DNA of 64,000 nt from Lepidodermella squamata (taxonomy: Eukaryota > Animalia > Gastrotricha), in the NCBI GenBank assembly GCA_047495785.1, contig JBLDXI010000033.1, positions 1,612,001 to 1,676,000 of the forward strand, in the 5' to 3' direction. Shown here piece after piece: positions 26,399 to 49,181 of the stretch. The first letter of the stretch is position 1. The number at the start of each line of letters is the position of its first letter. Both the position numbers and the translations under genes were made by a program. A model generated the notes under the pieces. It was not told the DNA's origin. It saw only the letters and a list, made by a program, of their open reading frames with translations, and did not search any database.

Positions 26399-28806
26399 TG
26401 TCGATGACCTGAAACGCCTTGTTCGATAGTAGAAATTGAATGGGAACATGATAATGTTTAGCCAGCAGTTGTTCGCATTTCGGATCGCCGCGTCAACATA
26501 TTCACCAGCAGTCAAGAGTTGAATGGCCCATAATTAAAATTGAAACCTTTCGGGTGTAAAAACACATCACAAGTGTAAGGATGACGCGCGGCTCTTTTGT
26601 CGACACGCTATTGAGTGAATTGCGCGGTTTTAAGGTGGACATAACGCTCGATTAGTGCGCTGTGTCATCATATCACCTTCTGCCCGCCACGTGTTTATAC
26701 GGTATAAATAAACATCTTCATACATAGAAACAGTCGCAATTCGCATTAATTAGCTTATTCGTGTCGAAATGACTTGCGGAAGAAACTAAACAGCCGCCCT
26801 GGTTTTATTTACTGCAGCTGTGGTATGTATAAGCGATGAGCCGTATAAAGGTATCATATACCATAGCCTCTCGTGTTTTTGTACGGTGACAATAGGCACG
26901 AGTTTTGTTTAGTTGTAGCAGTATAATAATAATATGACAAGCAGGTGGGGGTGCACACACACGAGCCGACAGAAGTACTATGCAGGAGGGGATGCACTTG
27001 AAACAGGTACCAACGCACTGACACGTGTTTTACGACCGACGCAATGGGATATGCGGACTATTATAATCGCCTTCATAAGTCACGCACAAATATAAAAGAA
27101 AATTGTTGAAAAATTAAGAAATAGCGTAAGTAGCGACTTCTAGTTGAAAATCGTTGTGACCCGGATTAAATTAGATGACCAGCGCAATTTTGGTGATCTC
27201 TAACGGCCTGATTTTCGGCAATGAAAATGACGCGATTTTAGCTTTTATTAATGTAAACGCTAGAGAAGCATCATGCTTTTGTTGTACCTAGTCTACATTG
27301 TGAGGGCAATAAATTAGCTCAACACAAATGGCTATATATGCGATATTATCATTCATCACTTATCAAACTGGCTGTCGACAGCCATTAGGAAAAATAAATA
27401 TCCATTACCAAATAATAATTTTTGGAGTACATGATGTAAACCACTGGATAATAGAGCTGATATACAACGTGGAAAATACAACAGCTGCTGTACTATTATG
27501 AGAGAAAATGCTGTTGCTGGCAGCGAGGAAAATTGTGAGGAAATTAAAAAAAATTGTCTCGCAAAATTCACCTGCTTTAGCAGCGAGACGCTTCGCAAAA
27601 TGTTCACTAAGACTTGACATAAACAAAGTGAAGCGCATTATTGCATTTATTGGCCCGTCCGGCGGCTATTGTGTTGTTAATGCTGGCTGCTGATGAGCGC
27701 AATATTTTTTATTTACCAGTAGTATTAGCGATGATGATGGTCAGCGGTCGAGTTTGTTCATACTCATCGGCAGTGTTTAAATGCGATCCAGATGCCGTGT
27801 GCAAACAGAAGATCGGCTAAACTAATTTCTGCTTTCAATATATTCCGCAAATTTTCGCCCTCGCTGTTAACGCTGTACCCCAGAAAAAACAATACAAAAA
27901 AATTGAATCCGTCGAAATTTATTACATTACTAATTTCGATGCGTTTTATTTACATTATTTTTACCCGTACATGCGAATCAGTTACAATTTTCGGTTTGCT
28001 TGAGATGTTAACTTTAATGAGAGTAATTCAATAATAAATAAGGACGTGCAATGCAAGAGACGAACAATTCGCCCGATAAATATAAATACAACGATGTCAA
28101 GTGCTGCGTCGCGATCACCGAACAATCGTCCAATTCCCGCAACCGGCCAATAAAATCTCTCTCTGTCTCCACCCCGGCCAAAAACCAGTCATCCGAATCT
28201 TCCAATGGCAAGCACTTGAATCGCAATATATGAGATTTCAATAGGAAAGAACAATAATGGTTTTAGTTGTTCGATCTATTCAAGACTCAACAACAAGAGT
28301 GAATAAATATTATTAAATTATCGTTGCGATTTAGCACAATCGACGCCTTTCGATTTTGGTGATACAAAAAAACGAACCAATATCATGATTACAACGTGAT
28401 ATTCAGACCACCATAACACCCCTGATTTAGTGTGCATAAACGCAAGATGGGTTGAGAAATAAAGCTCATTGAAGTCACATTTCAGCAAACAAAAAATGAG
28501 TAAGATTCACCGTCCATTTTCACATCTCCCAGCTCGTTTTCATGGGGCAGTCGCAACAAAGATAGATAACTAGTACGATTCATTCACTAATTCGAGTAAT
28601 ATGTAATATGTATGGTATTTTTTGTTTTTTGAAGCGCATGATAGCGGCAGTTTTCATTAGCATTCGAAATGATTTCGACAAAATTTCGAGTAGGAGGTTC
28701 ATATTGGGTTTCAATATACCCTTATAAGTTAAAGCAGAAACAAGACAAAAACTCGATTATCAAACAAATTATAGTCAATGAATTGTTTTTTGTAGTGTTG
28801 ATGGAT

Positions 28807-29857
28807 TTATTTCTTAGCCATTTCCTGCTCCATCTCGATCAGACGCTTAACACCTTCGTACATGTCCTGGGCGCATTGAACTTCGGAGAGGCCGAGACGA
28901 CGCTTGTTCGAGATGTCGTAGACACCACCCTCAGATTCCGAGTGCTCACCGTGGATTCCGCGGCAGTCGATGTGGTACTGTTCCAAGAGCTTCTTGAAGT
29001 CAGGATGGTTGATAGCATGAGGGATAGCAATGTGCACCGAGGCGCGCATGCCAGTTCCCAGATTGGTCGGGCAAGCCGACAAGTAGCCGAAGTTCTCATT
29101 GAACTGGAATCCCAGCTTCGAGCTAAGTTCGTTGACAGCACGAGCGAGACGGGTGAAGACAGCCAGGATATCACCGCCGGGTTGCATGGAGATGATTCGC
29201 AGCTGGTCTTCCTCGTTGACCCAGACCAAGAAGGTCTTGCTGTCGTTGTGGTAGATACCACGACCCTCTGGCCATTCGCGGTTGATACCAGCGGCCTCGA
29301 GGAAACGATCACCCTTCTTGAACAGGAAGTGGTCATCAACAAGTTGTTGACGGGTCTTCTCATCCATGCCGGAAAGAGGGTAGTAGTGGCCCTTAAGGTC
29401 GCCGTCCAGAGTGGTGAGGACACCAACAACGTTCTTCTCGATATCGATACGCTCTTGCTTGGTCAGGGTTGGCGTCAGACCGAATCCCTTCAAGTTGCGG
29501 GCGACGCGAATACGGGTCGAAACGATGTACTTGTTGTCCGGGTCAGGGTTGGTGACCTTCAGGTGGCTGGGATCGAAGTCAGCCGGGTGCTTATCAGTAG
29601 CTTTGTACGGCTTGTGGTAGTCCTCAATGACTGCGTTGAGGAGAGGTGCGAAGACATGGTAGCACTCCTCATCGCCAGCGTACAGGCCGACACCCGAATC
29701 CTGGTTGACAACACCCGAGTTGATGACCTCCTTCAATCCAACGCCGCGGGACGACTTCTTGTCCTTCAGCTGGTCGAAAATCTCTTTCGTGAGATACTTG
29801 CGAAGGAGGGACTTGTTGTTGTCAGTCCAGGTTGGGTATTCAAAATTGGCAGCAGCC
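28807..29857 (-). CDS. Arginine kinase domain 8 (terminal exon, true stop)
   Basis: SGVVNQDSGVGLYAGD, STRIRVARN, GDRFL, WVNEEDQLRIISMQ, CPTNLGT, RGIHGEH, YDISNKRRLG; acceptor TTTACAG. Confidence 0.95.
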
Positions 29858-32800
29858 CTGTAAACATAAAACATTTGTTTAAAACAGTAACTATGATGAT
29901 ACCTATTCAACTCTACGATTAAAGCCGCATTTTCAAACTATTTTGTTTTCAGTTCGAGGTAAAATTGTTTAAATGCATATTTCATTTTAATTAATCATGT
30001 CTTACTCACGGCTCATGTTCATTTTCAAAATCATTCTTTTATAACAGCGAGCAGGTAAAATGATAACACGAAATTGAGTGATCTACAGCAGGCAATTGCT
30101 TTCCGTCCACCTTAAATCGATCTCACTCGTTTTAGCTAATAAATGATGCTACTATGAGTTATTTTCGGGCAGTAAATTCGACCTATGAAATAACAGCTCC
30201 TTATTACAAGCATCGCGCGAATATTTCGTATAATAAAAGTTCATTTTTTCGCCTTTTAATTTCACGATTTGTAGTCCAAAAGTTAAACGGCTGAAAATTC
30301 GCGCAATTTTCGAAAATTTTCGAATTTTCGAATTTCAATTTTTCAATGCTAGGCTAAAATGACTAGATTTTTTAAATAAAATAAATCACTACAAAAGTAT
30401 TACTTTCCTTAGCTTGTATAATGGGAATGGTGAACTCAAGTTTAATAATGGTTTTTGGCACCGTCAAAATCGCTACTGGATTCCTATTACCCGAAAGGCA
30501 TGATAAAATGAAGCGTCCTATTACCGATGATCTCTTTCGCGTGACTTGTGAGCATCTCTATTCGAGGGGAATAAAAAATTCCGCTGACTTAGTGATCAGC
30601 ATTATAGTGATATTCTAAGTGCCTCTAAATATTTTCTAAAAGCTTTGAATCTGCACAGAACCTCTGCTTCACTTTCGATGTGATGAAGGTCGATTTTTTG
30701 AAAACACTTGTAAGCCTGAAATGCAAAGGCAGAAGTTGCTACATGGATGCACATGTAAGAGAAAGACGGCCACTAAATTCATTCTTCAAATTACGATTGC
30801 TTTTATGATGTGAGAATAAACAATAACAGTAATTCACTCACTTGGCCATTTCCTGCTCCATTTCAATCAAACGCTTGACGCCCTCGTACATGTCCTGGGC
30901 ACATTGGACCTCGGACAGACCAAGGCGACGCTTGTTCGAAATGTCGTAAACGCCACCCTCGGATTCCGAGTGCTCACCGTGGATTCCGCGGCAGTCGATG
31001 TGGTACTGTTCCAACAATTGTTTGAATTCAGGATGGTTGATGGCGTGCGGGATGGCGATATGCACCGAAGCACGCATGCCAGTACCCAAGTTGGTGGGGC
31101 AGGCCGAGAGATAACCGAAGTTCTCGTTAAACTGGAATCCCAGCTTCGAGCTAAGTTCGTTGACAGCACGAGCGAGACGGGTGAAGACAGCCAGAATATC
31201 ACCGCCAGGTTGCATGGAGATGATGCGGAGCTGATCCTCTTCGTTAACCCAGACAAGGAAGGTCTTGCTGTCGTTGTGGTAGATACCACGGCCTTCGGGC
31301 CATTCACGGTTGATGCCGGCAGCTTCCAAGAATCGATCACCCTTCTTGAAAAGGAAATGGTCATCAACCAGCTGTTTGCGGGTCTTTTCGTCCATGCCAG
31401 ACAGCGGGTAGTAGTGACCCTTCAGATCACCGCCGAGGGTGGTGAGGACACCAACGACCTTCTTCTCGATGTCGATGCGCTCCTGCTTGGTAAGGGTCGG
31501 GGTCAGACCGAATCCCTTCAGGTTGCGGGCGACGCGAATACGGGTCGAAACGATGTACTTGTTGTCCGGGTCAGGGTTGGTGACCTTCAAATGGCTCGGG
31601 TCGAAGTCAGCCGGGTGCTTATCAGTGGCTTTGTACGGCTTGTGGTAGTCCTCAATAACAGCGTTAAGAAGAGGAGCGAACACATTGTAGCACTCTTCAT
31701 CACCAGCATACAAACCAACTCCGGAATCCTGGTTGCAAACACCAGAGTTGATTACGTCTTTCAGGGTGACACCGCGGGACGACTTCTTGTCCTTCAGTTG
31801 ATCGAAAACTTCCTTGGTCAAGTACTTGCGAAGGAGCGACTTGTTGGTCTCAGTCCACTTCGGGTATTCGAGTTCAACGGGGATCCTGGAATCAACAGTA
31901 TCATCGTTATTCACATCAGCCATGGTTGAATTTTGAATTTTCTATAAGTAATGTGACTTGAGTTTTGCTTTAACAAGCGCTGTGTTTTTTGCGTCTACAA
32001 TAAACTAATCAAGCTAATTTCGATATCGCAGACTCGCTGATTAGGCACGAAACCTTTTTCTGCTGGCGACGACTGACTTTTGCATTACTTTGATGAGCCT
32101 GATCGAACAAATTATAGGTGCTGTAAAAAACTAATCATCCCTTAAGGATCATAAATGATACGGTTCCGGAAAATTCGTCACGAAATGCCGACGGAAAAAC
32201 GCACAGCTCTTAATTTTTCTTCATGGCGTGACTAAAAAAACTGCCATCATCCGCATTTTCCCTACAATCCAATCGATAGACAAATAGCTTTAATTCAAAG
32301 CTAGAAATCCAGGTTTACTGATGCGAATTTTATCCTGGAAAATATCGACAGGCACCGCAAGCGCCTTGAATTAGGTTTCAGTACTTGAAATTAGGAATTA
32401 TTTCTCTTTTCTAATAATCTTTCGGAAAATGTAGAGGAGTCAAAATATCAGAGAATGAATTAATTAAGGAGTTTTCCATCATCCTAACTGAAAAAATCAG
32501 TGTTAAAAAAGATACACTGAATCTTCAACCTGGAAACAAGTAACTTGCAAAATTAGAGCAATCCTAGATTTTGTGCTCAGTCTTTTTGGCTCTGTCTTAT
32601 GTAAAACGTTAGATAGCGAAACCACCGTAATGCCCGAAAAATATTCGCCAAAATGAAAATCTACTTGAAAAAATAATTCTTGAAATTGCCAAGACTCGCC
32701 CGTTTGAAAGTTGACCAGGCCATCAAATTATTACTGCTCTAAATCAAGTGACAAGGAAGAGTTCGCATGAAGATAAATTAAATCAATGAGACCGTCCAGG

Positions 32801-35800
32801 AGAAAAGCGGTCATACATTTTTGTGAACTAGAGGTAAAAAGCGCGAACATCCTCAGATTTCGATTCTGACTGATCGCAGCATTGTGAAAGTTATCAGCCC
32901 TATTCTTGCAGACACCCTAAATCCGCATATTAGGGCAGTACGGTATATATCATTACTCGGCTCCAGTCAAACTACATCTTAAAAATATAGAGGGATGAAT
33001 TATCACTAGCGATCACAGAATGGCCAAGCTAGGATCGCGAAACTCTCCATAGAAATTCTGAATTTCATGGTATTCAGGAGTCAGGTGAAAAATACAAATA
33101 GACTTAAATATTCAAAATGGTAAGCGTAACATATTTATAAACAGATTATCAACTTACTTGGCCATTTCCTGCTCCATCTCGATCAAACGCTTGACGCCCT
33201 CGTACATGTCCTGGGCACATTGGACCTCAGACAGGCCAAGGCGGCGCTTGTTCGAAATGTCGTAGACACCACCCTCGGATTCCGAGTGCTCTCCGTGAAT
33301 GCCTCGGCAGTCAATGTGGTACTGCTCAAGGACCTTCTTGAAGTCCGGATGACGAATGGCGTTGGGGATGGCGATATGAACCGAAGCACGCATGCCAGTG
33401 CCCAAGTTGGTAGGGCAGGCCGACAAGTAGCCAAAGTTCTCGTTGAACTGGAAGCCAAGCTTCGAGCTCAGCTCATTGACAGCGCGAGCCAAGCGAGTGA
33501 AGACAGCCAAAATGTCACCACCAGGTTGCATAGAGATGATGCGCAACTGGTCCTCCTCGTTGACCCAGACCAAAAAGGTCTTGCTGTCGTTGTGGTAGAT
33601 GCCACGACCCTCAGGCCATTCGCGGTTGATTCCGGCAGCTTCCAAGAAGCGATCTCCCTTCTTGAACAGGAAATGGTCATCGACGAGTTGTTGACGGGTC
33701 TTCTCATCCATTCCGGAGAGAGGGTAGTAGTGACCCTTCAGATCACCATCGAGAGTGGTCAAGACACCTACAACGTTCTTTTCGATGTCGATGCGCTCTT
33801 GCTTGGTAAGAGTCGGGGTAAGACCGAATCCCTTCAAGTTACGCGCGACACGAATACGGGTCGAAACGATGTACTTGTTCTCTGGGTCAGGATTGGTGAC
33901 CTTCAGGTGGCTGGGATCGAAGTCAGCCGGGTGCTTATCAGTGGCCTTGTATGGCTTGTGGTAGTCCTCGATAACGGCGTTCAGGAGAGGAGCGAAGACG
34001 TGGTAGCACTCTTCGTCACCAGCGTAGAGACCGACCCCGGAATCCTGGTTGCAAACGCCAGAGTTGATGACATCCTTCAGGGTAACACCACGCGCCGACT
34101 TCTTGTCCTTCAGCTGCTCGAAGACTTCCTTGGTCAAGTACTTGCGAAGCAGGGACTTGTTGTTGTCAGTCCATTTCGGGTATTCAAGACCAGCTGGAGT
34201 CCTAGAAAGGAAAAAAAAGCACCGTTTAATTTCCATATAATTGTCACGTCTAGTGTACTAGAAGTGCAAGGTCTATTGGCGTGCTCAATCGTTTAGGTAC
34301 TCAAGGACAGTTGTTTGTGACAGAAAACAAAAATAAAACTGATAGTCCCAGCTTAAAATTAAAATCAGCACTCAGTTTCGCGCAAACCATGACCAGAAAC
34401 AATGGTTAATCATTTCACAGGATATTCAAGTTAAAATCATCACGAAGATGTTCACTGAATGCTAGCTAATGCTATTAATGCATTGTAAATGTGATAGCCA
34501 CCGCCTATTAAGACTTTTAACCTATTTAGGTCCTATCAAGTGAGGTGAAATGTGATTAAAATACTTAGCTATGATAACAAAAACGGCAAAGTTGAGTTTG
34601 ATTTCCTGGCAGCTTTAAAATTAACTATAAAATGCCAAGTAAAATACCATAGAATCGAAAGTTTGATTGTACCCCAAAATATGAACTAATGATTTATCGA
34701 AAGCAATCCCCAAAAGAGGATATGAACATTTCCTAGAATTTGGCGCAAGATTATGAAGTAGTTTGGAAAAGCCCAGATGACTTTTAAAAGAGATCGAGTG
34801 AGATGGGAAATGGAAAGGTCTCCATCGAATTCATCTACAAGTTTATCAATTTTAGTAACGGCAAGACGGCTCAAAAAACATAAGTAAACAAAAAATTGAC
34901 GGTTAAAACTATGAACAAATATCAATATCACGAAAACAATCTATAGGATATTCCATCGAACAAATCTTGATTTCACCTCTTTTTGCTAATCATCGACGAT
35001 TTGTTAAACACCGTGAACACCCTATTACATGAAGATTACGCTATATGAGGGGAACGCTGAGCTAATTTACACGATGAATACGACATGGATGCATGCCGAC
35101 ATGATGGAAGGGGACTAGAACGATTAATTTCAACTCACTTGGCCATCTCCTGTTCCATCTCGATCAGGCGCTTGACACCCTCGTACATGTCCTGGGCACA
35201 TTGGACCTCAGACAGACCAAGGCGACGCTTGTTCGAAATGTCGTAGACACCGCCCTCGGATTCAGAGTGCTCACCATGGATGCCACGGCAGTCAATGTGG
35301 TACTGCTCAAGAACCTGTTTGAACTCAGGGTGGCGAATAGCGTTAGGAATCGCAATGTGAACCGAAGCACGCATGCCGGTTCCCAAGTTGGTCGGGCAGG
35401 CCGACAAGTAGCCAAAGTTCTCGCTGAACTGGAAGCCAAGCTTCGCGCTCAGTTCATTGACGGCGCGAGCGAGACGGGTGAAGACAGCCAAGATATCACC
35501 ACCAGGTTGCATGGAGATGATGCGGAGCTGATCCTCTTCGTTGACCCAGACCAAGAAGGTCTTGCTGTCGTTGTGGTAGATACCACGGCCTTCGGGCCAT
35601 TCACGGTTAATACCGGCAGCTTCCAGGAAGCGATCACCCTTCTTGAACAGGAAGTGGTCGTCGACCAACTGTTGACGGGTCTTTTCGTCCATTCCAGACA
35701 AGGGGTAGTAGTGGCCCTTCAGGTCACCATCCAGAGTGGTGAGGACACCGACGACGTTCTTCTCAATATCGATACGCTCTTGCTTGGTAAGAGTTGGCGT

Positions 35801-38800
35801 CAGGCCGAATCCCTTCAAGTTACGAGCGACACGAATGCGAGTTGAAACGATGTACTTGTTGTCGGGGTCAGGGTTGGTGACCTTCAGGTGGCTGGGATCG
35901 AAGTCAGCCGGGTGCTTGTCGGTGGCCTTGTAGGGCTTGTGGTAGTCCTCGATGACAGCGTTGAGGAGAGGAGCGAAGACGTGGTAGCACTCTTCGTCGC
36001 CAGCGTACAGACCCACTCCGGAATCCTGGTTGCAAACACCAGAGTTGATGACATCCTTCAGGGTGACACCGCGGGCCGATTTCTTGTCCTTCAGCTGTTC
36101 GAAGACCTCCTTGGTCAAGTACTTGCGAAGCAGGGACTTGTTGTTGTCAGTCCACTTCGGGTATTCCAGTGGAACTGGGACCCTGAAAAATTAGAACACC
36201 GGATTATTAAACGCCTCCCATTTTTAGATCGGAATTACGTTTCATCAGTAGCATCGGTCATGATGTTTTTGAATATTGCTCAGTTTAACTTAACCGCTCT
36301 ATAAATACGCGGAATTTTTAAGGTTCCCTGAATCATAAATTTGACGACATTCATAACTTTCTCTGACGAGAAATGAATAGCCTAACTATACATTCAGGAC
36401 AACGAATACGGTTCGTTACATAGCTATCTATGTCATTCGCGAAAACAAATATAAGCCTAGCCTCATTCCAGATGAAAGAAAAAGCTGGATTGACAACGCA
36501 AGCGGAAACCGCCTGGGACAGTGCAAGACAAATAACCCGAAGCTTAGACTAGACGATCATAGAGCAACTCCTTAGTGCAATCTGATGCTTAACATGTTTT
36601 CAACTTTCACAAGACAACTGGGGCTACATTGATGCAACAAGCAATTTAAACCTCTCTTATTGAATTCAGAGCTGATAAAAGAAGCGGAAACGGAAAAATA
36701 ATTCGGAAAGCTTACTTGGCCATTTCCTGTTCCATTTCAATCAAGCGCTTGACACCTTCGTACATATCTTGGGCGCACTGCACCTCAGAAAGACCAAGGC
36801 GACGCTTGTTCGAAATATCGTAAACGCCACCCTCGGACTCGGAGTGCTCACCATGAATGCCGCGGCAATCAATGTGGTACTGTTCCAAGAGCTTCTTGAA
36901 CTCAGGGTGGCGAATAGCATTGGGGATGGCGATGTGAACTGAAGCACGCATGCCGGTACCCAAGTTGGTCGGGCAGGCCGAGAGATAGCCGAAGTTTTCA
37001 TTGAACTGGAAGCCCAATTTGTTGCTCAGCTCATTGACAGCACGAGCCAAGCGAGTGAAGACGGCCAGGATATCACCACCAGGTTGCATGGAGATGATGC
37101 GGAGCTGATCTTCCTCGTTGACCCACACAAGGAAGGTCTTGTCGTCATTGTGGTAGATGCCACGACCCTCAGGCCATTCGCGGTTGATACCGGCGGCCTC
37201 GAGGAAACGATCGCCCTTCTTGAAGAGGAAATGATCATCGACCAACTGTTGGCGGGTCTTTTCGTCCATGCCAGACAAGGGGTAGTAGTGACCCTTCAGG
37301 TCACCGCCGAGAGTAGTCAAAACTCCGACGACCTTCTTCTCGATATCAATGCGCTCTTGTTTCGTCAGGGTCGGGGTCAGACCGAATCCCTTCAAGTTGC
37401 GGGCAACACGAATACGAGTGGAGACAATGAATTTGTTGTCTGGATCCGGGTTAGTGACCTTCAGGTGGCTGGGGTCGAAGTCAGCTGGGTGCTTGTCAGT
37501 AGCTTTGTACGGCTTGTGGTAGTCCTCGATAACGGCATTCAGCAGAGGAGCAAACACCTTGTAGCACTCCTCATCGCCAGCGTACAAGCCGACACCTGAA
37601 TCCTGGTTGCAAACACCAGAGTTGATGATCTCTTTCAGACCAACGCCACGAGACGACTTCTTGTCCTTCAGCTGGTCGAAAATCTCTTTCGTGAGATACT
37701 TGCGGAGAAGAGATTTGTTGTTATCAGTCCATTTCGGGTATTCGAAAGGCGCTTTCCTGTCGTATAAATAACAAAAATTAGTTAGAATAGATGGGTAATT
37801 CTTTTCTATTTCCCTCTCGATTATCTAGAGGCTTTAGAGGTTGCTTTATTGCAAGTTATTGAACATCCGCGTCTAAGAAAATGATGCTATTTGGTTTAGC
37901 GATGCTCAGCAATTTTTTGAAACGATTAACCGAGTCAAGTATTCGAATTAATTGCGATTATAAGCTCCCGAAATCGACTCGATTAATCGAATTGAATCCT
38001 CCCTGATTAGGAAACCAAAACTGAGACTCGATTAGAAAATCACGAATTTTGATAAGAACGAACGATTTTAAATGTCAAAGTTTCGGAAGATTACACATCC
38101 CCAGATCATTAGAAATTAAAAAGAAGGGGTGTGTGACATTTTCAGAGTACAACCGTCAGCGAGACAATAGGTGAAAAATAATGCCAGGGAACCGGCGTAA
38201 AAAAAAGAATATAAGTTGGAAACTAACGCGGCCATCTCCTTTTCCATCTCGATCAAACGCTTGACACCCTCGTACATGTCCTGGGCGCATTGAACTTCGG
38301 AGAGGCCGAGGCGACGTTTGTTCGAAATGTCGTAGACACCTCCCTCGGACTCGGAGTGCTCACCATGAATGCCACGGCAGTCGATGTGGTACTGCTCCAA
38401 CAGCTTCTTGAACTCAGGGTGATTGATGGCATGGGGGATAGCAATGTGCACCGAGGCGCGCATGCCAGTGCCCAAGTTGGTGGGGCAAGCCGACATGTAA
38501 CCGAAGTTCTCGTTGAACTGGAAGCCAAGCTTCGAGCTCAGTTCGTTCACGGCACGAGCCAAGCGAGTGAATACGGCCAGGATATCGCCACCTGGTTGCA
38601 TGGAGATGATGCGGAGCTGGTCCTCTTCGTTGACCCAGACCAAGAAGGTCTTGTCGTCGTTGTGGAAGATACCACGACCCTCAGGCCATTCGCGATTGAT
38701 ACCAGCGGCCTCGAGGAAGCGATCACCCTTCTTGAAGAGGAAATGGTCATCGACCAGCTGTTTGCGGGTCTTCTCATCCATTCCGGAGAGAGGGTAGTAG

Positions 38801-41800
38801 TGGCCCTTTAGATCACCGCCGAGGGTGGTGAGGACACCAACGACCTTCTTCTCGATGTCGATGCGCTCCTGCTTCGTCAAGGTTGGCGTCAGACCATAGC
38901 CCTTCAAATTACGCGCGACACGAATGCGGGTGGAAACGATGAATTTATTGTCTGGATCCGGGTTGGTCACCTTCAAATGGCTCGGGTCGAAGTCAGCCGG
39001 GTGCTTATCAGTGGCTTTGTACGGCTTGTGGTAGTCTTCGATAACGGCGTTGAGGAGAGGCGCGAAAACCTTGTAGCATTCCTCATCACCAGCGTAGAGA
39101 CCAACTCCGGAATCCTGGTTGCAAACACCCGAGTTGATGACCTCCTTCAAACCAACTCCACGAGACGATTTCTTGTCCTTCAGCTGGTCGAAAATTTCCT
39201 TGGTCAAGTATTTGCGAAGGAGAGACTTGTTGTTGTCGGTCCACTTCGGGTATTCAAAAGGCGCTTTCCTGTCATAAAAAATAAAATAATAACAAACAGT
39301 CATTATGAAATTCTTTTATCGTCGTCCCAGTCATCACTCTCGTTTTCTATTATCATCTTTTTCGTTGTCTTAATTCAGCTGCTTTGAGCTGACAGATTCG
39401 CTCAAATGCGATGGAACAGTACAAATACGAGACCACGATCGAAAACCATCAAGACTTAACACTTAATCCCCGGGAAAATGAGGATACTTGAGATAGAATA
39501 TGTCTTCAAATTTCAATGGTTTGCACAAAGTCCTACTTTTACGCCAAAGTTCACAAAATATCGTATAACAGAAAAAACGTTCATCTTACCCGTGAATTTC
39601 TTCTCGTAAAACTAAAGTTGAGACTAAGACTGAGAAATAGGTGGGAAATAGCATCTTATCTTTGATTGCGTCCCCTAGCGAAAAATACAGGAAAAATGTA
39701 AGAGACTCACGCGGCCATTTCCTGTTCCATCTCGATCAGGCGCTTCACGCCCTCGTACATGTCCTGGGCACACTGGACCTCGGACAGACCAAGGCGACGC
39801 TTGTTGGAGATGTCGTAGACACCACCTTCGGACTCGGAGTGCTCACCATGGATTCCGCGGCAGTCGATGTGGTACTGCTCCAAGAGCTTCTTGAACTCAG
39901 GGTGATTGATGGCGTGGGGGATAGCGATATGGACCGATGCGCGCATACCAGTACCCAGGTTAGTCGGGCAGGCTGACAAGTAGCCGAAGTTCTCGTTGAA
40001 CTGGAAGCCGAGCTTCGAGCTCAGTTCATTGACGGCGCGAGCGAGACGGGTGAAGACAGCCAAGATATCACCACCAGGTTGCATGGAGATAATGCGAAGT
40101 TGATCCTCTTCGTTGACCCAGACCAAGAAGGTCTTGTCGTTATTGTGGTAGATACCACGACCCTCGGGCCATTCACGGTTAATGCCGGCAGCCTCGAGGA
40201 AGCGATCGCCCTTCTTGAACAGGAAGTGATCATCGACCAGCTGTTGACGGGTCTTTTCATCCATGCCCGACAACGGGTAGTAGTGACCCTTCAGATCACC
40301 GCCGAGTGTAGTCAAAACTCCGACGACCTTCTTCTCGATATCAATACGCTCCTGTTTCGTCAAGGTTGGCGTCAATCCGTAACCCTTCAAGTTGCGGGCG
40401 ACACGAATACGGGTCGAAACGATGAATTTGTTGTCGGGGTCAGGGTTAGTGACCTTGAGATGGCTAGGATCGAAGTCAGCCGGGTGCTTATCAGTGGCCT
40501 TATACGGCTTGTGGTAATCTTCGATAACGGCGTTGAGAAGAGGCGCGAACACCTTGTAGCACTCCTCATCACCAGCGTAGAGACCAACGCCGGAATCCTG
40601 GTTGCAAACACCCGAGTTGATGACCTCCTTCAATCCAACTCCACGAGACGATTTCTTGTCCTTCAGCTGATCGAAGACTTCCTTGGTCAGGTACTTGCGA
40701 AGAAGGGACTTGTTGTTATCAGTCCATTTCGGGTATTCGAAGGGCGCTTTCCTGAAGAAACAAAAGGATGTTAATTGAAACCTAGTGTCACGTCATCTTT
40801 CAACTATTTTCGACACGTTTGGAAGGCACGCAAAGAAACGGTATCATAATGACCCGTTGTATGTTGCGCACAGCCCCATTCTCGATTAACAAGAATTGAA
40901 GTTTTTATGGTTTGATCAGTATTGATCACTAGCATCTTTCATCTTATCCTTATTTCAAATTATATTTTCAGGTTATTATAATATCCATGCTTGGTATTTC
41001 GGTTCAAATAAAGCGCGTTACCGAGCTAATTTATAAAAATGCATTAGTTTTTGACACTTGGAATTTGACTGCAGAACAACATTCTCGAATCAATTTTAAA
41101 ATTTTAAAATGCCAAGCCGCTCAGTTAAAAGAAGGTGATGATCCTCGAATCAAATCATGATTAAAAGTGCTGATCAAATAGGAATCTATTGCAAGTCATT
41201 TTATACAAACAATTGTTTTAAACAAAATTGAAATTTCGAAGGCATGAATATAGCTGATTTTAAAATAATTTAAAACATTCAAAAGGGCAATTTTTGTCAA
41301 TTTTTGGTAATTATTGCCTTGTGATCAAAAGGGTTCTTTGATTACTTTGATCAAAAACATTAACTCGAGACATGGAAAAAGAAAAGCGGACTTACGCGGC
41401 CATTTCCTGTTCCATCGCAATCAGGCGCTTCACGCCCTCGTACATGTCCTGGGCACATTGGACCTCAGAAAGGCCGAGGCGACGCTTGTTTGAAATATCG
41501 TAAACGCCACCTTCGGATTCCGAGTGTTCGCCGTGGATGCCGCGGCAATCAATGTGATACTGTTCCAAGACCTTCTTGAAGTCAGGATGGTTGATGGCAT
41601 GAGGGATAGCAATGTGCACCGAGGCGCGCATGCCGGTACCCAAGTTGGTGGGGCAAGCCGAGAGATAACCGAAATTGGGGTTGAATTGGAAACCCAGCTT
41701 CGAGCTCAGTTCGTTAACAGCGCGAGCGAGACGGGTGAAAACAGCCAAGATATCACCACCTGGTTGCATGGAGATGATGCGCAGTTGATCTTCCTCATTG

Positions 41801-42576
41801 ACCCAGACAAGGAAGGTCTTGTCATTGTTGTGGAAAATACCACGACCCTCAGGCCATTCGCGGTTGATTCCGGCAGCTTCCAAGAAGCGATCGCCCTTCT
41901 TGAAAAGGAAATGATCATCAACGAGTTGTTGACGGGTCTTTTCGTCCATTCCAGATAGAGGGTAGTAGTGACCTTTGAGGTCGCCACCAAGCGAGGTGAG
42001 AACGCCAACGACTTTCTGTTCAATTTCGATGCGCTCCTGCTTAGTCAGGGTTGGGGTCAGACCATAGCCCTTCAAGTTGCGAGCGACACGAATGCGGGTC
42101 GAAACGATGTACTTGTTATCAGGGTCGGGGTTAGTGACCTTCAGGTGGCTGGGGTCGAAATCAGCCGGGTGCTTATCAGTGGCTTTGTACGGCTTATGGT
42201 AGTCTTCGATCACAGGGTTGACAAGGGATGCGAACAGGGTGTAGCACTCCTCATCGCCGACGTAGAGACCAACTCCGGAATCTTGGTTGACTACGCCAGA
42301 GTTGATAACGTCCTTCAGGCTGACACCGCGGGCCGACTTCTTGTCCTTCAGCTGTTCGAAGACTTCCTTGGTGAGGTGCTTGCGAAGCAGCGATTTGTTT
42401 TCAGGCGTCCATTCAGGGTACGACATTTTTGTAGTTAGATTTGCAGCAGCAGATCCGACACGGTCAAGTGCAGCGTCGAGTTGAGCTTTCAGTTGCCTGA
42501 AATAAATTTAAAATAATAAATTTTGAATAAAATCGTCGAGCAATTACAGCAGTTAACCGATTATTTACCTGTACAT
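28807..42576 (-). CDS. Predicted eight-domain arginine (phosphagen) kinase gene: micro-exon 42569-42576 plus kinase exons 41396-42496, 39711-40751, 38228-39268, 36716-37756, 35139-36182, 33158-34201, 30842-31885, 28807-29857 (~2,804 aa)
   Basis: All internal exons are multiples of 3 (1101, 1041 x3, 1044 x3 nt), start after AG, and end at phase-2 donors (GTAAGT, GTGAGT, GTTAGT, GTAAGC). Only the last unit has a non-donor stop (MAKK*). Confidence 0.75.
30842..31885 (-). CDS. Arginine kinase domain 7 (also has its own in-frame ATG at 31923)
   Basis: Same phosphagen-kinase motifs; donor AA|GTGAGT; acceptor GATTCCAG is weak. Confidence 0.93.
33158..34201 (-). CDS. Arginine kinase domain 6
   Basis: Same motifs; acceptor TTTCCTTTCTAG, donor AA|GTAAGT. 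Confidence 0.95.
35139..36182 (-). CDS. Arginine kinase domain 5 (candidate private first exon 36239-36261, MTDATDET)
   Basis: Same motifs; acceptor TTTTTCAG, donor AA|GTGAGT. Confidence 0.95.
36716..37756 (-). CDS. Arginine kinase domain 4
   Basis: Same motifs; no ATG near the start; acceptor ACGACAG, donor AA|GTAAGC. Confidence 0.95.
38228..39268 (-). CDS. Arginine kinase domain 3
   Basis: Same motifs; acceptor TTTTATGACAG, donor GC|GTTAGT (no in-frame stop at the domain end). Confidence 0.95.
39711..40751 (-). CDS. Arginine kinase domain 2
   Basis: Same motifs; acceptor TTTCTTCAG, donor GC|GTGAGT. Confidence 0.95.
41396..42496 (-). CDS. Arginine kinase domain 1 with N-terminal helical leader (QLKAQLDAALDRVGSAAANLTTK)
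   Basis: Same motifs; acceptor TATTTCAG, donor GC|GTAAGT. Confidence 0.95.
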
Positions 42577-43288: not shown

Positions 43289-43428
43289 CTGTCTTTTGAT
43301 TTTTCGTGGCGATGATGATGGTGATGGTGATGGTGGCGATTTTCACCCGGCGATGGTGACGATTCTTTACCGGTTGCCGGCAAGACGCGCTTAGCCGCGC
43401 TACCTATAGCTACGGTTGCCGTTAACAT
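43289..43428 (-). CDS. Candidate alternative first exon of the kinase gene, poly-His
   Basis: MLTATVAIGSAAKRVLPATGKESSPSPGENRHHHHHHHHRHEKSKD ends at a phase-2 donor AG|GTACGT, compatible with the 42496 acceptor. Confidence 0.55.
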
Positions 43429-46400: not shown

Positions 46401-48104
46401 GTACGTAGGCGATGCAAGTAATTGCGTTTATGTTGGAATATTGGCTACAGAATCTGAGCATTGAGTATATAAAAGTAAAGTTTCCCAAGCTGAGCGGGTA
46501 AAATCGATGGAAAAATCGACTCAAGCGCAGATTATTGAAGATGATTGGATCTCAAGAATCGAAGTTGATCGGAGTCTTCTAGATTTCGCATTGCTGATGT
46601 TTTTTTTGAAATTGTCCCTAAGCTATCAGGTTAATGAAAATTAGACACAAACAATCTCGGTGCAATTTTTTTGCGTAGATGACACCTGATCATCGAATTT
46701 AAGAGAGCCTTGAGCTATACGACACAATCGATAAGCGCGTGTGTTGATGAAGATGGCGAGAACTCGGAATACAAGAAAACTGTTGATAATAATGCTAATG
46801 AAGGGAGAGTAATAATCACTACAGTAAAATCCTTCCTCTGTGCTCGTGCTGTGTTTTTTTCACTTTTTCTGCAGTATATTATCACTGCGATGAAGTGATC
46901 CGACGCAGCAGCTGCGCCTCCATCTCTCCCTCATCGCGGATTTTTTTTCGCTGAGATCTACCTGCGTGTATGTCTCATTCGCAATCGCGCTTGCATTACG
47001 TTTTTTTCTCGGCTACTTCCGCGGAGTTTTTATGCACTCTGCGCATTTTTAACGATAATAGGGCGGAACATATGTAGTAATATTGCGAATAGAGTTATAT
47101 AAGATGCTTATTATTTCTGCATTAATGTAAATTAAACACGCCGTTGCCTGCCGAAAAATTTACTCATTTGTCTGGCCATTGGGGTATAGCGCAGAAATTA
47201 CGTGCCAATAACAGAATCGATGTAGCCGGCTTCGTGAGATCGCAAAAAAACTTGGCTACCAAATATTCGCGAGCTGGCAGTAGAATAATAAAAAAATAAT
47301 TAGGTAAAGGACCGTTTTCGATTCAGGTTAATGCGAATGAGTAGGAAATATGCCGTCGAGAATTTATTTTATTTCTCTCATGCTTGATTGAAAGTGTAAA
47401 TTGCTATTTCTTTGATTAAAAGGACGAAATAAAAACAGCTAAACAATCACAAGTTCCCACATCAAGTGCAACCGTATGCGAGAAGGTCATATATTTCTAT
47501 CGGATTTTCCGGGCTGGGCGAGGTCTGATTCCAAGCCACACCGCTTTATCGAACAGGCCGTAATTTCTTCACAGACCCAGAAAAATCATTATGAGCTATT
47601 TTAGATTCGTGTTGGCTGTCAAATAGAGCAATATGACCTAATACACTTTTTATTTTTTTTCTCATCTATCAAATGCAGGCTGACCAATCGGGACATTGTT
47701 GGAAAAAACCGGCGATGGCATTTTTCAATCCGACATTGAACTAAAAGTGGCACGATCCCTCAATAATAAATGGTGGCTTTTTTCGACTGAATATCGCCTG
47801 AAATATTCAGACGATATAAATTGTTCTCCATCTGCTGCTATTTCAATTAACAGTTACTTCAACTTCATCGCAGCAGTGCATGGACGCTAAAGACCTCGGA
47901 AAAGTTATTAAAAAGCCGCAGGGTCACTACCCTTTTAATCAAGTGTACCATTCGAGCAATTATTCGATAGCCTTGTATATATGCCTATCAGCTGTTCCAA
48001 TGTCTGCTCGACAGTAAAAGGCAATTTGTAGCAAAAACTATATTGATAAACACTTCCTAGCTTGGAAACCTTCTTCTATTTTTTCAATTTAAGCAGGCTT
48101 GATT

Positions 48105-49181
48105 ATGGCTACGTGCTGGGTCGCAGGTAAGAAATCGACGATTCCTATTACTTACCCTCTTTTCGCAGATAACAACCAATCATTGATGCGAAAATATTTG
48201 ACCAAAGAAATGTTCGAAACGCTCAAGGATAAAATAACATCGAAGGGCACGACACTTCGCGACATTTGTATCACCGGGGTCATGAATCAGCATTCATTGA
48301 TTGGGATCTACCTGGGCGATGAAGAGTGCTACAACACTTTCGAGCCTCTATACGACCTTGTCATTGAAGATTACCACGCGCCATACAAAGTTACCGAAAC
48401 TCACAAAACTGACTTCGACCCGAGCCACCTTGAAGTAGCTAATCCTGACCCTGACGGGAAATTTATCAAGTCGACCCGAATTAGGGTCGCACGAAACCTC
48501 AAAGGCTTTGGTCTAGCTTTAACTCTTACGACCGAGGAACGCCTCGCTATTGAAAGCAAAGTTGTCGAAATTCTGGAATCTCTCGGCGGTGAATTCAAGG
48601 GCAAATACTGCCCATTGAAAGGAATGGATGAAGAAACTCGGAAGCAGTTGGTCGCAGATCATTTCCTGTTCAAGAAAGAGGACAACTTCAAGGCATCGGC
48701 CGGTATTCTAGACGACTGGCCTGAGGGTCGAGGCATTTTTTTCAACGATAATAAGACCTTCTTGGTCTGGATCAATGAGGGCGATCATGTCAGGATCATC
48801 TCAATGCAACCTGGCGGTGACATTGAGGCGGTTTTCACCCGCCTGGCGACAGCGGTTAACGAGCTTAGTTCAAAGCTAGGTTTCCAGACCAATCAGCATC
48901 TTGGAAACCTGACTTCATGCCCGAGCAATCTAGGAACAGGAATGCGAGCTTCAGTTCACGTCAAGATCCCGCATGCCAGTCAACACCCTGATTTTCAGTC
49001 TGTTCTAGACAAGTACCATATTCAAGCTCGAGGCATTGATGGCGAACATTCGGAATCGAAAGACGGAATCTACGACATTTCCAACCTACGCCGCCTTGGC
49101 CAATCAGAGGTTCAATGCGTTCAAGATATGTACGACGGCGTGACTAAGCTGCTCGAAATGGAAAAATCATTGGCCAAATAA
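48105..49181 (+). CDS. Divergent single-domain phosphagen kinase paralog (NEGD variant)
   Basis: STRIRVARN, WINEGDHVRIISMQ, CPSNLGT, RGIDGEH, YDISNLRRLG; opposite orientation to the array. Confidence 0.9.
   Translation: MATCWVAGKKSTIPITYPLFADNNQSLMRKYLTKEMFETLKDKITSKGTTLRDICITGVMNQHSLIGIYLGDEECYNTFEPLYDLVIEDYHAPYKVTETHKTDFDPSHLEVANPDPDGKFIKSTRIRVARNLKGFGLALTLTTEERLAIESKVVEILESLGGEFKGKYCPLKGMDEETRKQLVADHFLFKKEDNFKASAGILDDWPEGRGIFFNDNKTFLVWINEGDHVRIISMQPGGDIEAVFTRLATAVNELSSKLGFQTNQHLGNLTSCPSNLGTGMRASVHVKIPHASQHPDFQSVLDKYHIQARGIDGEHSESKDGIYDISNLRRLGQSEVQCVQDMYDGVTKLLEMEKSLAK

What the first reader, a model, noticed from the sequence alone, without database searches (positions are those of the whole stretch)
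28807..42576. Eight 'tandem genes' look like one gene for a contiguous eight-domain arginine kinase (~2,804 aa)
Seen in sequence: the apparent stops of six copies (AAG TAA/TGA, GCG TAA/TGA) sit inside consensus phase-2 donors (AA|GTAAGT, AA|GTGAGT, GC|GTGAGT, GC|GTAAGT, AA|GTAAGC). A seventh copy (domain 3) has donor GC|GTTAGT at the same codon with no stop. Each downstream unit starts after an AG in the matching phase, and exon lengths are 1101/1041/1041/1041/1044/1044/1044 nt, all 3n. Several copies have no plausible start codon, and only the last ends in a real stop. The joined CDS is 8,415 nt with only ~5-aa linkers (EMAA-KAPFEY, EMAK-VPVPLEY). Established knowledge: contiguous two-domain arginine/taurocyamine kinases, three-domain flagellar creatine kinase and a four-domain ciliate AK are described; I know of no eight-domain form. 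Inference: a ~315-kDa covalent kinase chain built one exon per domain, possibly an ATP-buffering scaffold for cilia or muscle. The weakest link is the domain-7 acceptor.
Basis: partly seen in the sequence, partly recalled or inferred. Interest (0 to 1): 0.92.

Follow-up and report, generated by a model that had tools for sequence, protein, structure and literature searches.

The report
Eight-domain arginine kinase gene
Eight complete copies of the energy-buffering enzyme arginine kinase, one exon each, are spliced into one giant gene; RNA shows four of the seven joins, and the largest such chain I found in the literature I searched has three copies.

Summary
On the minus strand, 28807-42496, lie eight complete arginine kinase (AK) units, each carrying both Pfam halves and all catalytic motifs.

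- **Splice signals:** units 1-7 end in a phase-2 GT donor. Units 2-8 start right after an AG in the matching phase.
- **Joined frame:** the exons give one open frame of 8,337 nt (2,778 aa, 314 kDa) from ATG 42426.
- **The apparent stops:** they follow automatically from phase 2 plus GTRAGT, because the next codon reads TAA or TGA.
- **RNA evidence:** two runs cover exons but not introns. They carry exact GT..AG joints for 1→2 and 2→3 (55 nt each side), 4→5 (22 nt side) and, through loose ends, 5→6. The DNA run has none.
- **Untested joins:** 3→4 was not seen.
- **Weak point:** unit 7 has a weak acceptor and an upstream in-frame ATG in the context AACCATGG, so a 6+2 split or a two-domain isoform stays open.
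- **Selection:** all domains are under strong purifying selection (dN/dS about 0.03, dS 0.6-1.5).

Polydomain AKs of two to three domains are described. Public predictions reach five domains. This is an extreme new variant of a known kind.

The parts
43289..43428 (-). Candidate first coding exon (140 nt, phase 2, donor AG|GTACGT). It encodes MLTATVAIGSAAKRVLPATGKESSPSPGENRHHHHHHHHRHEKSKD(R). Inferred only.
   Evidence: Open from an ATG in the context ACCATGT. GC is 0.52, like the AK exons (0.52-0.55) and unlike the introns (0.32-0.38). Its phase fits the acceptor at 42497/42496. No RNA evidence was obtained.
41396..42496 (-). Exon with AK domain 1. Acceptor TTTATTTCAG|G. In-frame ATG at 42426 (MSYPEW). 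Donor GC|GTAAGT.
   Evidence: The D1→D2 joint 41396→40751 appears in run X3 with 55 nt on each side. In the frame upstream of the ATG, LDRV...TTK-MSYPEW resembles relative A's LDKLTGPSK-MNYPEW.
40752..41395 (-). Bridge intron 1 (644 nt, phase 2)
   Evidence: Zero or near-zero depth in X1 and X3. Covered by DNA run X2. Skipped with GT..AG ends in X3.
39711..40751 (-). Exon with AK domain 2 (1041 nt, no ATG upstream in frame, donor GC|GTGAGT)
39269..39710 (-). Bridge intron 2 (442 nt, phase 2)
   Evidence: Skipped with GT..AG ends in X1 (side 22) and X3 (side 55)
38228..39268 (-). Exon with AK domain 3 (1041 nt, donor GC|GTTAGT, no stop at the donor)
37757..38227 (-). Bridge intron 3 (471 nt, phase 2). 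Splicing is inferred and was not seen.
   Evidence: X1 and X3 have zero depth in the intron bins, but no joint is listed. D4 has no start codon of its own, yet it is spliced to D5 and is under purifying selection.
36716..37756 (-). Exon with AK domain 4 (1041 nt, no ATG upstream in frame, donor AA|GTAAGC)
36183..36715 (-). Bridge intron 4 (533 nt, phase 2)
   Evidence: Skipped with GT..AG ends in X1 (side 22). A second X1 contig carries the D5 linker letters between a D4 end and a domain start (tables 5 and 5c).
35139..36182 (-). Exon with AK domain 5 (1044 nt, no ATG upstream in frame, donor AA|GTGAGT)
34202..35138 (-). Bridge intron 5 (937 nt, phase 2)
   Evidence: Outside the laid stretch. 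X1 contigs that cross-map on D2 and D3 carry ...GCC|AAGACTCCAGCTGGTCTTGAATAC. That is a domain end ending GCCAA joined to the D6 linker K-TPAGLEY. DNA run X2 shows the unspliced CTAG|GACTCC instead (table 7).
33158..34201 (-). Exon with AK domain 6 (1044 nt, donor AA|GTAAGT)
31886..33157 (-). Bridge intron 6 (1272 nt, phase 2), the weakest link. It holds an in-frame ATG at 31921-31923 (AACCATGG) that could start a D7-D8 two-domain product.
   Evidence: The acceptor's pyrimidine tract is only 0.53, no higher than the intron interior. Sequence. The 130 nt upstream of the acceptor are held by DNA run X2 only, not by RNA-like X1 or X3. That rests on 9 sampled words, so it is weak.
30842..31885 (-). 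Exon with AK domain 7 (1044 nt, donor AA|GTGAGT)
29858..30841 (-). Bridge intron 7 (984 nt, phase 2). Splicing is inferred.
   Evidence: Consensus donor and acceptor TTTTATGTTTACAG|G in the matching phase.
28807..29857 (-). Exon with AK domain 8 and the true stop (AAG AAA TAA, no donor)

Best explanation
One transcription unit on the minus strand runs from about 28.6 kb to at least 42.5 kb, and probably to 43.4 kb. It encodes a contiguous polydomain arginine kinase.

**Architecture.** There are eight complete AK domains, one exon per domain. They are joined by seven phase-2 'bridge' introns and 5-6-residue linkers (EMAA-KAPFEYPKW, EMAK-VPVPLEYPKW and similar).

**What is shown.** All eight units carry both Pfam halves and the catalytic motifs. 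The RNA joints link D1-D2-D3 and D4-D5-D6.

**What is inferred.**
- The D3→D4, D6→D7 and D7→D8 joins, and hence the full 314-320-kDa chain.
- The upstream start exon.
- The biochemical reading: each domain catalyses MgATP + L-arginine = MgADP + phosphoarginine, so one polypeptide would carry eight active sites.
- The role: a high-capacity, slowly diffusing phosphoarginine/ATP buffer made from one promoter. Inter-domain cooperativity may occur, as reported for the sea-anemone two-domain AK.

**Odds.** At least six domains in one chain: about 0.85-0.9. All eight in one chain as a real product: about 0.6.
For: - **Anatomy:** eight units, each with PF02807 and PF00217. All carry DSGVGxY, RxRxAR, PEGRGI, NEEDxLR, CPTNLGTGMRAS and RGIHGEH.
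- **Frame:** the joined exons give one 8,337-nt ORF of 2,778 aa and 314.5 kDa.
- **Start codons:** D2, D4 and D5 have no possible start codon.
- **RNA:** runs X1 and X3 cover exons but not introns. DNA run X2 covers everything and has no joints. Exact GT..AG joints were seen at 41396→40751 (X3, 55 nt each side), 39711→39268 (X1 and X3) and 36716→36182 (X1, 22-nt side). Loose ends join a GCCAA domain end to the D6 linker (checked).
- **Selection:** domains are 91-98% identical in protein but only 81-90% in DNA. dS is 0.6-1.5 and dN/dS averages 0.03. Every domain is therefore kept functional, including those that cannot be translated alone.
- **Splice signals:** they are conserved although the introns share no similarity.
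- **Relative A:** at 82% identity it has the same phase-2 intron at the same codon between its domains 1 and 2.
- **Relative B:** another animal has a four-domain AK, also with one exon per domain.
- **Closest solved structure:** the Anthopleura two-domain AK, 4rf6.
Against: - No single read or contig spans more than one junction.
- No D3→D4 joint was listed, and its donor, GTTAGT, is weak.
- D6→D7 and D7→D8 were never laid, because read laying allowed one call.
- D7's acceptor has no pyrimidine enrichment. An in-frame ATG in the context AACCATGG lies 38 nt upstream. It would give an N-terminus of normal AK length.
- X1 and X3 are RNA only by inference; their records do not say so.
- The X1 joints have only 22 nt on the short side.
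- There is no protein-level evidence.
Confidence: 0.62

Rival explanations
1. There are two genes. The first is a six-domain AK (D1-D6) that ends at the TAA inside the D6 donor. The second is a separate two-domain AK (D7-D8) that starts at ATG 31923 (MADVNNDDTVDSRIPVELEYPKW...) from a promoter in the 1,272-nt spacer.
For: - D7's acceptor tract is not pyrimidine-enriched: 0.53 against 0.52 in the intron interior.
- The ATG sits in the context AACCATGG, and the spacer is the longest of the seven.
- The resulting N-terminus has the length seen in the genome's single-domain AKs.
- Two-domain AKs are a described class.
Against: - D6 keeps a perfect AA|GTAAGT donor. D7 keeps CAG|G at exactly the same position as D5, D6 and D8, although the surrounding intron sequence is randomised.
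- The 38 nt between the ATG and the AG have intron-like GC of 0.395.
- None of 9 sampled words from the 130 nt upstream of the acceptor is held by RNA-like runs X1 or X3. This is weak.
- A CTGAT branch-point-like motif lies about 30 nt upstream of the AG.
Confidence: 0.25
2. One gene produces a nested series of products. Alternative first exons (for example before D7) or intron retention would stop translation at the TAA or TGA inside each donor. The result would be proteins of one to eight domains besides the full chain.
For: - Six of seven donors are followed at once by an in-frame stop, so any retained intron ends the protein cleanly at ...EMAA or ...EMAK.
- In-frame ATGs exist upstream of D3, D6, D7 and D8.
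Against: - The stops follow automatically from phase 2 plus GTRAGT.
- The ATGs before D3, D6 and D8 lie inside T-rich acceptor tracts and look like chance.
- Intron bins have zero or near-zero depth in X1 and X3.
- No loose ends with poly(A) were seen, although contigs are poor at showing ends.
Confidence: 0.2
3. The units are eight separate tandem AK genes, or an operon resolved by spliced-leader trans-splicing at the AG sites. Each unit would make a protein of about 40 kDa.
For: Each unit is a complete AK domain. Six are followed by a stop codon. ORF finders list them as separate ORFs.
Against: - D2, D4 and D5 have no start codon.
- Cis-spliced exon-exon joints are present in RNA-like runs.
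- All seven junctions are phase-compatible.
- D3 has no stop at its end.
Confidence: 0.02

Closest known systems
[quoted passage not shown]
   Same: It is the best PDB match. Each window domain aligns end to end with both of its domains (538 and 521 bits). It shows the same principle: complete AK domains fused head to tail by a short linker after gene duplication and fusion (titles cited). From memory, not checked here: its gene also has a bridge intron between the domains.
   Different: It has two domains, not eight. It carries a 3-residue insertion (STGEDAG) that the window domains lack (alignment). In the tree the window domains form their own clade, so the expansion happened within this lineage.
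[quoted passage not shown] 2012 and Matsuo et al. 2017, as cited in PMC13679545), and 'polydomain phosphagen kinases' (PMC12467219)
   Same: The same class: contiguous AK domains in one polypeptide.
   Different: Three is the largest number I found described in the literature I could search. Here the count is six to eight.
Predicted 3-5-domain phosphagen kinases in public protein sets (Lineus longissimus XP_064653124, 3 domains; Mallomonas annulata, 4; an unnamed transcriptome protein, 5)
   Same: Several ATP-gua_Ptrans units in one predicted chain.
   Different: They are 30-51% identical to the window domain. None has more than five matched stretches among the best 150 of 1.84 billion representatives. 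None has been characterised.
Sea-urchin sperm flagellar creatine kinase (three contiguous domains, N-myristoylated); established knowledge, title cited
   Same: A covalent chain of phosphagen-kinase domains, thought to serve energy transport.
   Different: It is a creatine kinase, not an arginine kinase, and has three domains. Its lipid anchor signal is absent from every N-terminus modelled here. A neighbouring single-domain AK does start MGCANSK.
Four-domain AK of an unnamed relative (ENA ERZ18545498 contig ptg000015l, locus L017)
   Same: One exon per domain. The first unit has the ATG and only the last has a real C-terminus. The splice phases match.
   Different: It has four domains. Its bridge introns are phase 1, at a different position. 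Its domains group with the sponge Dysidea avara AK, not with the window's. This looks like an independent expansion.

Membership tests
Phosphagen (ATP:guanidino) kinase, arginine-kinase type | An N-terminal helical domain (PF02807) plus a C-terminal catalytic domain (PF00217) in every unit | tested here: met
   All eight units: PF02807 at E 1e-27 to 1e-30 and PF00217 at about 1e-76, with full profile coverage
Phosphagen (ATP:guanidino) kinase, arginine-kinase type | Catalytic residues: reactive Cys in CPTNLGT, the Glu pair in NEED, and the phosphate-binding arginines (Limulus numbering R126, R229, R280, R309, E314; established knowledge) | tested here: met
   The motifs RxRxAR, NEEDQLR, CPTNLGTGMRAS and RGIHGEH are present in all eight domains
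Phosphagen (ATP:guanidino) kinase, arginine-kinase type | AK-type guanidino-substrate loop (D62-S-G-V-G-x-Y68) and the R193 partner | tested here: met
   DSGVGLY and PEGRGI occur in all eight domains. The nearest characterised enzyme is an AK, 4rf6.
Phosphagen (ATP:guanidino) kinase, arginine-kinase type | Phosphoryl transfer between ATP and L-arginine | not testable with these tools
   Needs an enzyme assay of the recombinant protein or of single domains
Contiguous (polydomain) phosphagen kinase | Two or more complete kinase domains in one reading frame | tested here: met
   The joined exons give a single 2,778-codon ORF with one stop, at the end
Contiguous (polydomain) phosphagen kinase | Domain exons joined in one mRNA | tested here: inconclusive
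   Joints were seen for 1→2 and 2→3 (55 nt each side) and 4→5 (22-nt side). 5→6 is supported by loose ends. 3→4 was not listed. No molecule spans more than one junction.
Contiguous (polydomain) phosphagen kinase | One polypeptide of the predicted size (about 315 kDa) | not testable with these tools
   Needs a Western blot, or mass spectrometry of linker peptides
Flagellar-type lipid-anchored phosphagen kinase | An N-terminal MG... myristoylation signal | tested here: not met
   The modelled N-termini are MSYPEW, MYRQLK and MLTATVAIG. MGCANSK is found on a different, single-domain AK 5 kb beyond the window.

The most novel reading that the evidence does not exclude
All eight domains sit in one chain of about 320 kDa. 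That would be the largest contiguous phosphagen kinase known: a covalent octamer, comparable in domain count to the non-covalent octamer of mitochondrial creatine kinase. It would be led by the upstream basic, His-rich exon (MLTATVAIGSAAKRVL...HHHHHHHH), which targets or anchors it, for example to mitochondria or to a ciliary or cortical structure. Such giant AK chains would also have arisen independently several times in early-branching animals: eight domains here, four in relative B and at least two in relative A.
Probability: 0.15. Interest if true: 0.8.

Novelty: new variant of a known kind. Interest (0 to 1): 0.6.

Why it matters
Phosphagen kinases are the textbook case of enzyme evolution by gene duplication and fusion, but the described fusions stop at two or three domains.

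A chain of six to eight fully conserved active domains raises several questions:
- It extends that series far enough to ask what selects for covalent multimerisation: slow diffusion, anchoring, cooperativity, or simply dosage from one promoter.
- It offers a natural one-exon-per-domain system for studying domain accretion.
- It shows that automatic gene callers, prokaryote-style ORF callers in particular, will split such genes into about 40-kDa pieces. Phase-2 GTRAGT donors read as stop codons, so polydomain kinases are probably undercounted in public proteomes.

Tried and rejected
- **Separate tandem genes or an SL operon:** rejected. Three units lack start codons and cis-spliced joints exist.
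- **The stops as a special signal:** rejected. They follow automatically from phase 2 plus GTRAGT.
judged unlikely. GC there is 0.24-0.30. Not excluded.
- **Naming the organism failed.**
  - The 794-aa ANF-receptor ORF found nothing at E 1e-20.
  - An intronless HSP70 found only 73-83% hits spread over many animal phyla.
  - The ESM Atlas gave generic AK clusters.
  - Notes of this scan call it an unidentified small-intron animal genome.
  - The genome is 121 Mb in 151 contigs. AK relatives point to non-bilaterian animals (sea anemone, sponges), but this is not settled.
- **The JGI metagenome scan** returned only bacterial-type AKs of 52-59% identity and no close relatives.
- **An exact look-up of P0024** found no contig. 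One look-up was wasted on wrong coordinates.
- **Literature searches** for AKs of four or more domains found none.
- **Not attempted:**
  - Structure or complex prediction of joined domains.
  - A search for long homologues with the joined protein, for the same reason.

Full report
**1. What is in the sequence**

The window is eukaryotic DNA from an animal, with 40-50% GC. Neighbouring genes encode ANF-receptor, ankyrin, sHSP, MFS and alpha-2-macroglobulin TED domains.

On the minus strand, eight copies of the arginine-kinase signature CPTNLGT occur between 29073 and 41655. Each lies in an open frame of 351-399 codons. Each unit matches both Pfam halves of a phosphagen kinase over their full length: PF02807 and PF00217. 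Each keeps the substrate-loop and catalytic motifs: DSGVGLY, RxRxAR, PEGRGI, NEEDQLR, CPTNLGTGMRAS and RGIHGEH. The residue roles come from established knowledge of Limulus AK.

**2. The splice architecture**

*Donors.* Units 1-7 all end, at the same codon after ...EMA, in a GT donor that leaves two bases in the exon. The donors are GC|GTAAGT, GC|GTGAGT, GC|GTTAGT, AA|GTAAGC, AA|GTGAGT, AA|GTAAGT and AA|GTGAGT.

*Acceptors.* Units 2-8 are each preceded by CAG|G or TAG|G, placed so that one base completes the split codon.

*Exon model (minus strand, first to last base).*

| Exon | Coordinates |
|---|---|
| D1 | 42496 (acceptor) or 42426 (ATG) to 41396 |
| D2 | 40751-39711 |
| D3 | 39268-38228 |
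| D4 | 37756-36716 |
| D5 | 36182-35139 |
| D6 | 34201-33158 |
| D7 | 31885-30842 |
| D8 | 29857-28807 |

- Joined from ATG 42426, these give one 8,337-nt ORF with a single stop at the end. The product is 2,778 aa, 314.5 kDa, pI 6.5.
- The linkers are EMAA-KAPFEYPKW (D2-D4) and EMAK-VPVPL/TPAGL/IPVEL/AAANF-EYP (D5-D8).
- D8 alone ends without a donor: AAG AAA TAA.
- D2, D4 and D5 have no in-frame ATG upstream.

A phase-2 intron that begins GTAAGT or GTGAGT always reads xxG TAA or xxG TGA. D3's GTTAGT reads TTA, hence no stop there.

*Why the signals are more than chance.*
- The seven introns share no detectable similarity in an all-against-all BLAST. Their GC is 0.32-0.38, against 0.52-0.55 in the exons.
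- Donor positions +1..+6 are 83% identical, against 34% for the next 30 nt.
- Acceptor positions -3..-1 are 90% identical, against 33% further upstream.

**3. RNA evidence**

Three public runs hold the stretch 36100-42099. I laid them on it; this was the only read-laying run allowed.
- X2 covers all 30 bins, introns included, and shows no joint. It behaves as DNA.
- X1 and X3 cover the exon bins but have zero or near-zero depth in the intron bins. They behave as RNA, although their records do not say so.

Exact GT..AG-bounded joints appear only in X1 and X3:

| Junction | Evidence |
|---|---|
| D1→D2 (41396→40751) | X3, 55 nt on each side |
| D2→D3 (39711→39268) | X3, 55 nt on each side; X1, 22 nt |
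| D4→D5 (36716→36182) | X1, 22 nt; plus a second contig that carries the D5 linker with one synonymous difference |
| D5→D6 | X1 loose ends only (see below) |

For D5→D6, X1 contigs that cross-map on the ends of D2 and D3 read ...GCC|AAG ACT CCA GCT GGT CTT GAA TAC. That is a domain end of the GCCAA type joined to the D6 linker K-TPAGLEY. The DNA run shows the unspliced CTAG|GACTCC at the same place. D5's 3' end is 93-97% identical to D2's, which explains the cross-mapping.

No D3→D4 joint was listed. D6→D7 and D7→D8 lie outside the laid stretch. The contigs are short, so no record spans two junctions.

**4. Selection and history**

- The domains are 91-98% identical in protein but only 81-90% identical in DNA.
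- By Nei-Gojobori, dS is 0.62-1.51 and the mean dN/dS is 0.03. Identity at four-fold sites is 53%.
- The duplications are therefore old and there is no recent gene conversion.
- Every domain is under strong purifying selection, including those that cannot be translated on their own. This is the strongest indirect argument that D4 is part of the chain. D4 has no ATG and is seen spliced to D5. Its only phase-compatible upstream partner is D3, whose frame otherwise runs 37 codons into the intron.
- In a maximum-likelihood tree the eight domains form one clade (99/99), with D1 the most divergent.

**5. Relatives**

- **Relative A.** The nearest public protein is 82% identical. It comes from a 1.4-kb metagenome contig (L015). 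That contig holds a first domain (MNYPEW...), then AA|GTATGA...TTTAAAG|G, a 53-nt phase-2 intron at the same codon, and then a second domain with the linker K-VPATLEYPKW. Its two domains are sister to the window's eight.
- **Relative B.** Locus L017 comes from an 8.6-Mb contig of another, unnamed animal. It has four AK units, one exon each. The first has the ATG and the last the only true C-terminus. They are joined by phase-1 introns at a different position. Its domains group with the AK of the sponge Dysidea avara.
- Exon-per-domain AK chains have therefore arisen, or been homogenised, in more than one lineage.

**6. The two ends and the weak link**

*5' end.*
- The D1 exon has a strong acceptor (TTTATTTCAG|G) 70 nt upstream of ATG 42426. 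The frame is open across those 70 nt (QLKAQLDAALDRVGSAAANLTTK-MS).
- Relative A's frame is also open there, and similar (LDKLTGPSK-MN). The protein therefore probably starts in an upstream exon that ends in phase 2.
- A 140-nt ORF from ATG 43428 to AG|GTACGT at 43289 also fits the phase and has exon-like GC of 0.52. It encodes a basic, then His-rich peptide. It would give about 2,848 aa. Neither candidate was tested with RNA.

*D6→D7.*
- Against an intron: the acceptor tract is not pyrimidine-enriched (0.53). An in-frame ATG in the context AACCATGG lies 38 nt upstream. It would give an N-terminus of the length seen in this genome's single-domain AKs.
- For an intron:
  - D6 keeps a perfect donor.
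  - D7 keeps CAG|G at the same position as its paralogues.
  - The ATG segment has intron-like GC.
  - None of 9 sampled words from the 130 nt upstream is held by the RNA-like runs. This is weak, because the words are few and correlated.
- I put a 6+2 arrangement at about 0.25.

**7. Comparison with what is known**

- **Structure.** The best solved structure is the two-domain AK of Anthopleura japonicus (4rf6). Both of its domains align end to end with a window domain.
- **Literature.** The papers I could search describe two-domain AKs and taurocyamine kinases and the three-domain flagellar creatine kinase. [quoted passage not shown]
- **Protein survey.** An exhaustive HMMER search of 1.84 billion representative proteins with one domain found chains with at most five matched stretches. 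These are protist and unnamed transcriptome proteins at about 30% identity, and a three-domain nemertean protein at 51%. It found nothing resembling a six- or eight-domain AK. That library may simply lack this genome's annotation.
- **Placement.** The finding is thus a member of the contiguous-AK class by every feature I could test. The exception is proof of the full-length mRNA and protein. Its domain count is far outside the described range.
- **Not the flagellar type.** It lacks an MG... myristoylation start, which a different AK just beyond the window has (MGCANSK).

**8. Mechanism**

*Shown:* eight intact AK catalytic units, cis-splicing of at least four junctions, and strong constraint on all units.

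*Inferred:* one polypeptide with six to eight active sites acts as a high-capacity phosphoarginine/ATP buffer. Covalent chaining would lower diffusibility and place many sites behind one targeting or anchoring N-terminus. It could also allow neighbour cooperativity, as reported for the two-domain enzyme (title cited). Localisation to cilia, muscle or mitochondria is speculation.

**9. Verdict**

A polydomain gene is near certain, at least six domains is very likely, and all eight is more likely than not.
- It is a new variant of a known kind and of moderate-to-high interest.
- The same stretch was noted once more in this scan (s1-422760, nested isoform idea). I tested that only partly.

Noticed in passing
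window 48099-49181 (+); G000:C33:1676179-1677210 (+), locus L011: Two further single-exon AK genes lie on the opposite strand. They are 66-67% identical to the array domains and start with their own ATG (MATCWVAGKK..., MADGTCWAAGKK...). The locus is therefore an AK gene cluster, not only the eight-unit array.
   Followed up: partly
L009 (G000:C33:1679893-1683927), about 5 kb beyond the window's end; L012 on contig C21: A single-domain AK, 78% identical, begins MGCANSK. This is an N-myristoylation/palmitoylation-type signal like those of flagellar phosphagen kinases. Its orthologue in relative A begins MGCAGSK. Just upstream sits a divergent AK-like unit with CTTNLGS in place of CPTNLGT, split over two frames. 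An intact paralogue of that unit lies on C21.
   Followed up: partly
L017:6038-16490 (+) (ENA ERZ18545498, contig ptg000015l): Another, unnamed animal has a four-domain AK with one exon per domain and phase-1 bridge introns. Public gene calls split it into four separate proteins. Its domains group with the AK of the sponge Dysidea avara.
   Followed up: yes
L015:29-1398 (+): Relative A (82% identity) has a 53-nt phase-2 intron between its AK domains 1 and 2, at the same codon as in the window. Intron length thus differs about tenfold while position and phase are kept.
   Followed up: yes
window 38116-38227 (-): If intron 3 were retained, the D3 frame would run on for 37 codons into a hydrophobic tail (LVSNLYSFFYAGSLALFFTYCLADGC...). 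This is probably a chance product of T-rich intron sequence.
   Followed up: no
window 28669-29922, 30904-31929, 33220-34296 (+) and others: Long ORFs of up to 417 aa lie antisense to the AK exons. They are shadow ORFs of the strongly biased coding strand, not genes.
   Followed up: partly
protein P0101 (Logan contig, 77% identical to the window domain): An AK from an unnamed organism ends in a CaaX-type box (…KSKLCTVL). That would be a prenylation signal, another lipid-anchoring route for an AK.
   Followed up: no
window 5426-7810 (+) and 21675-23945 (+): Two long single-exon ORFs (794 and 756 aa) have a weak ANF-receptor ligand-binding domain. The first has no homologue at E 1e-20 in the 5.8-billion-protein search, so these are fast-evolving, lineage-specific receptors.
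   Followed up: partly
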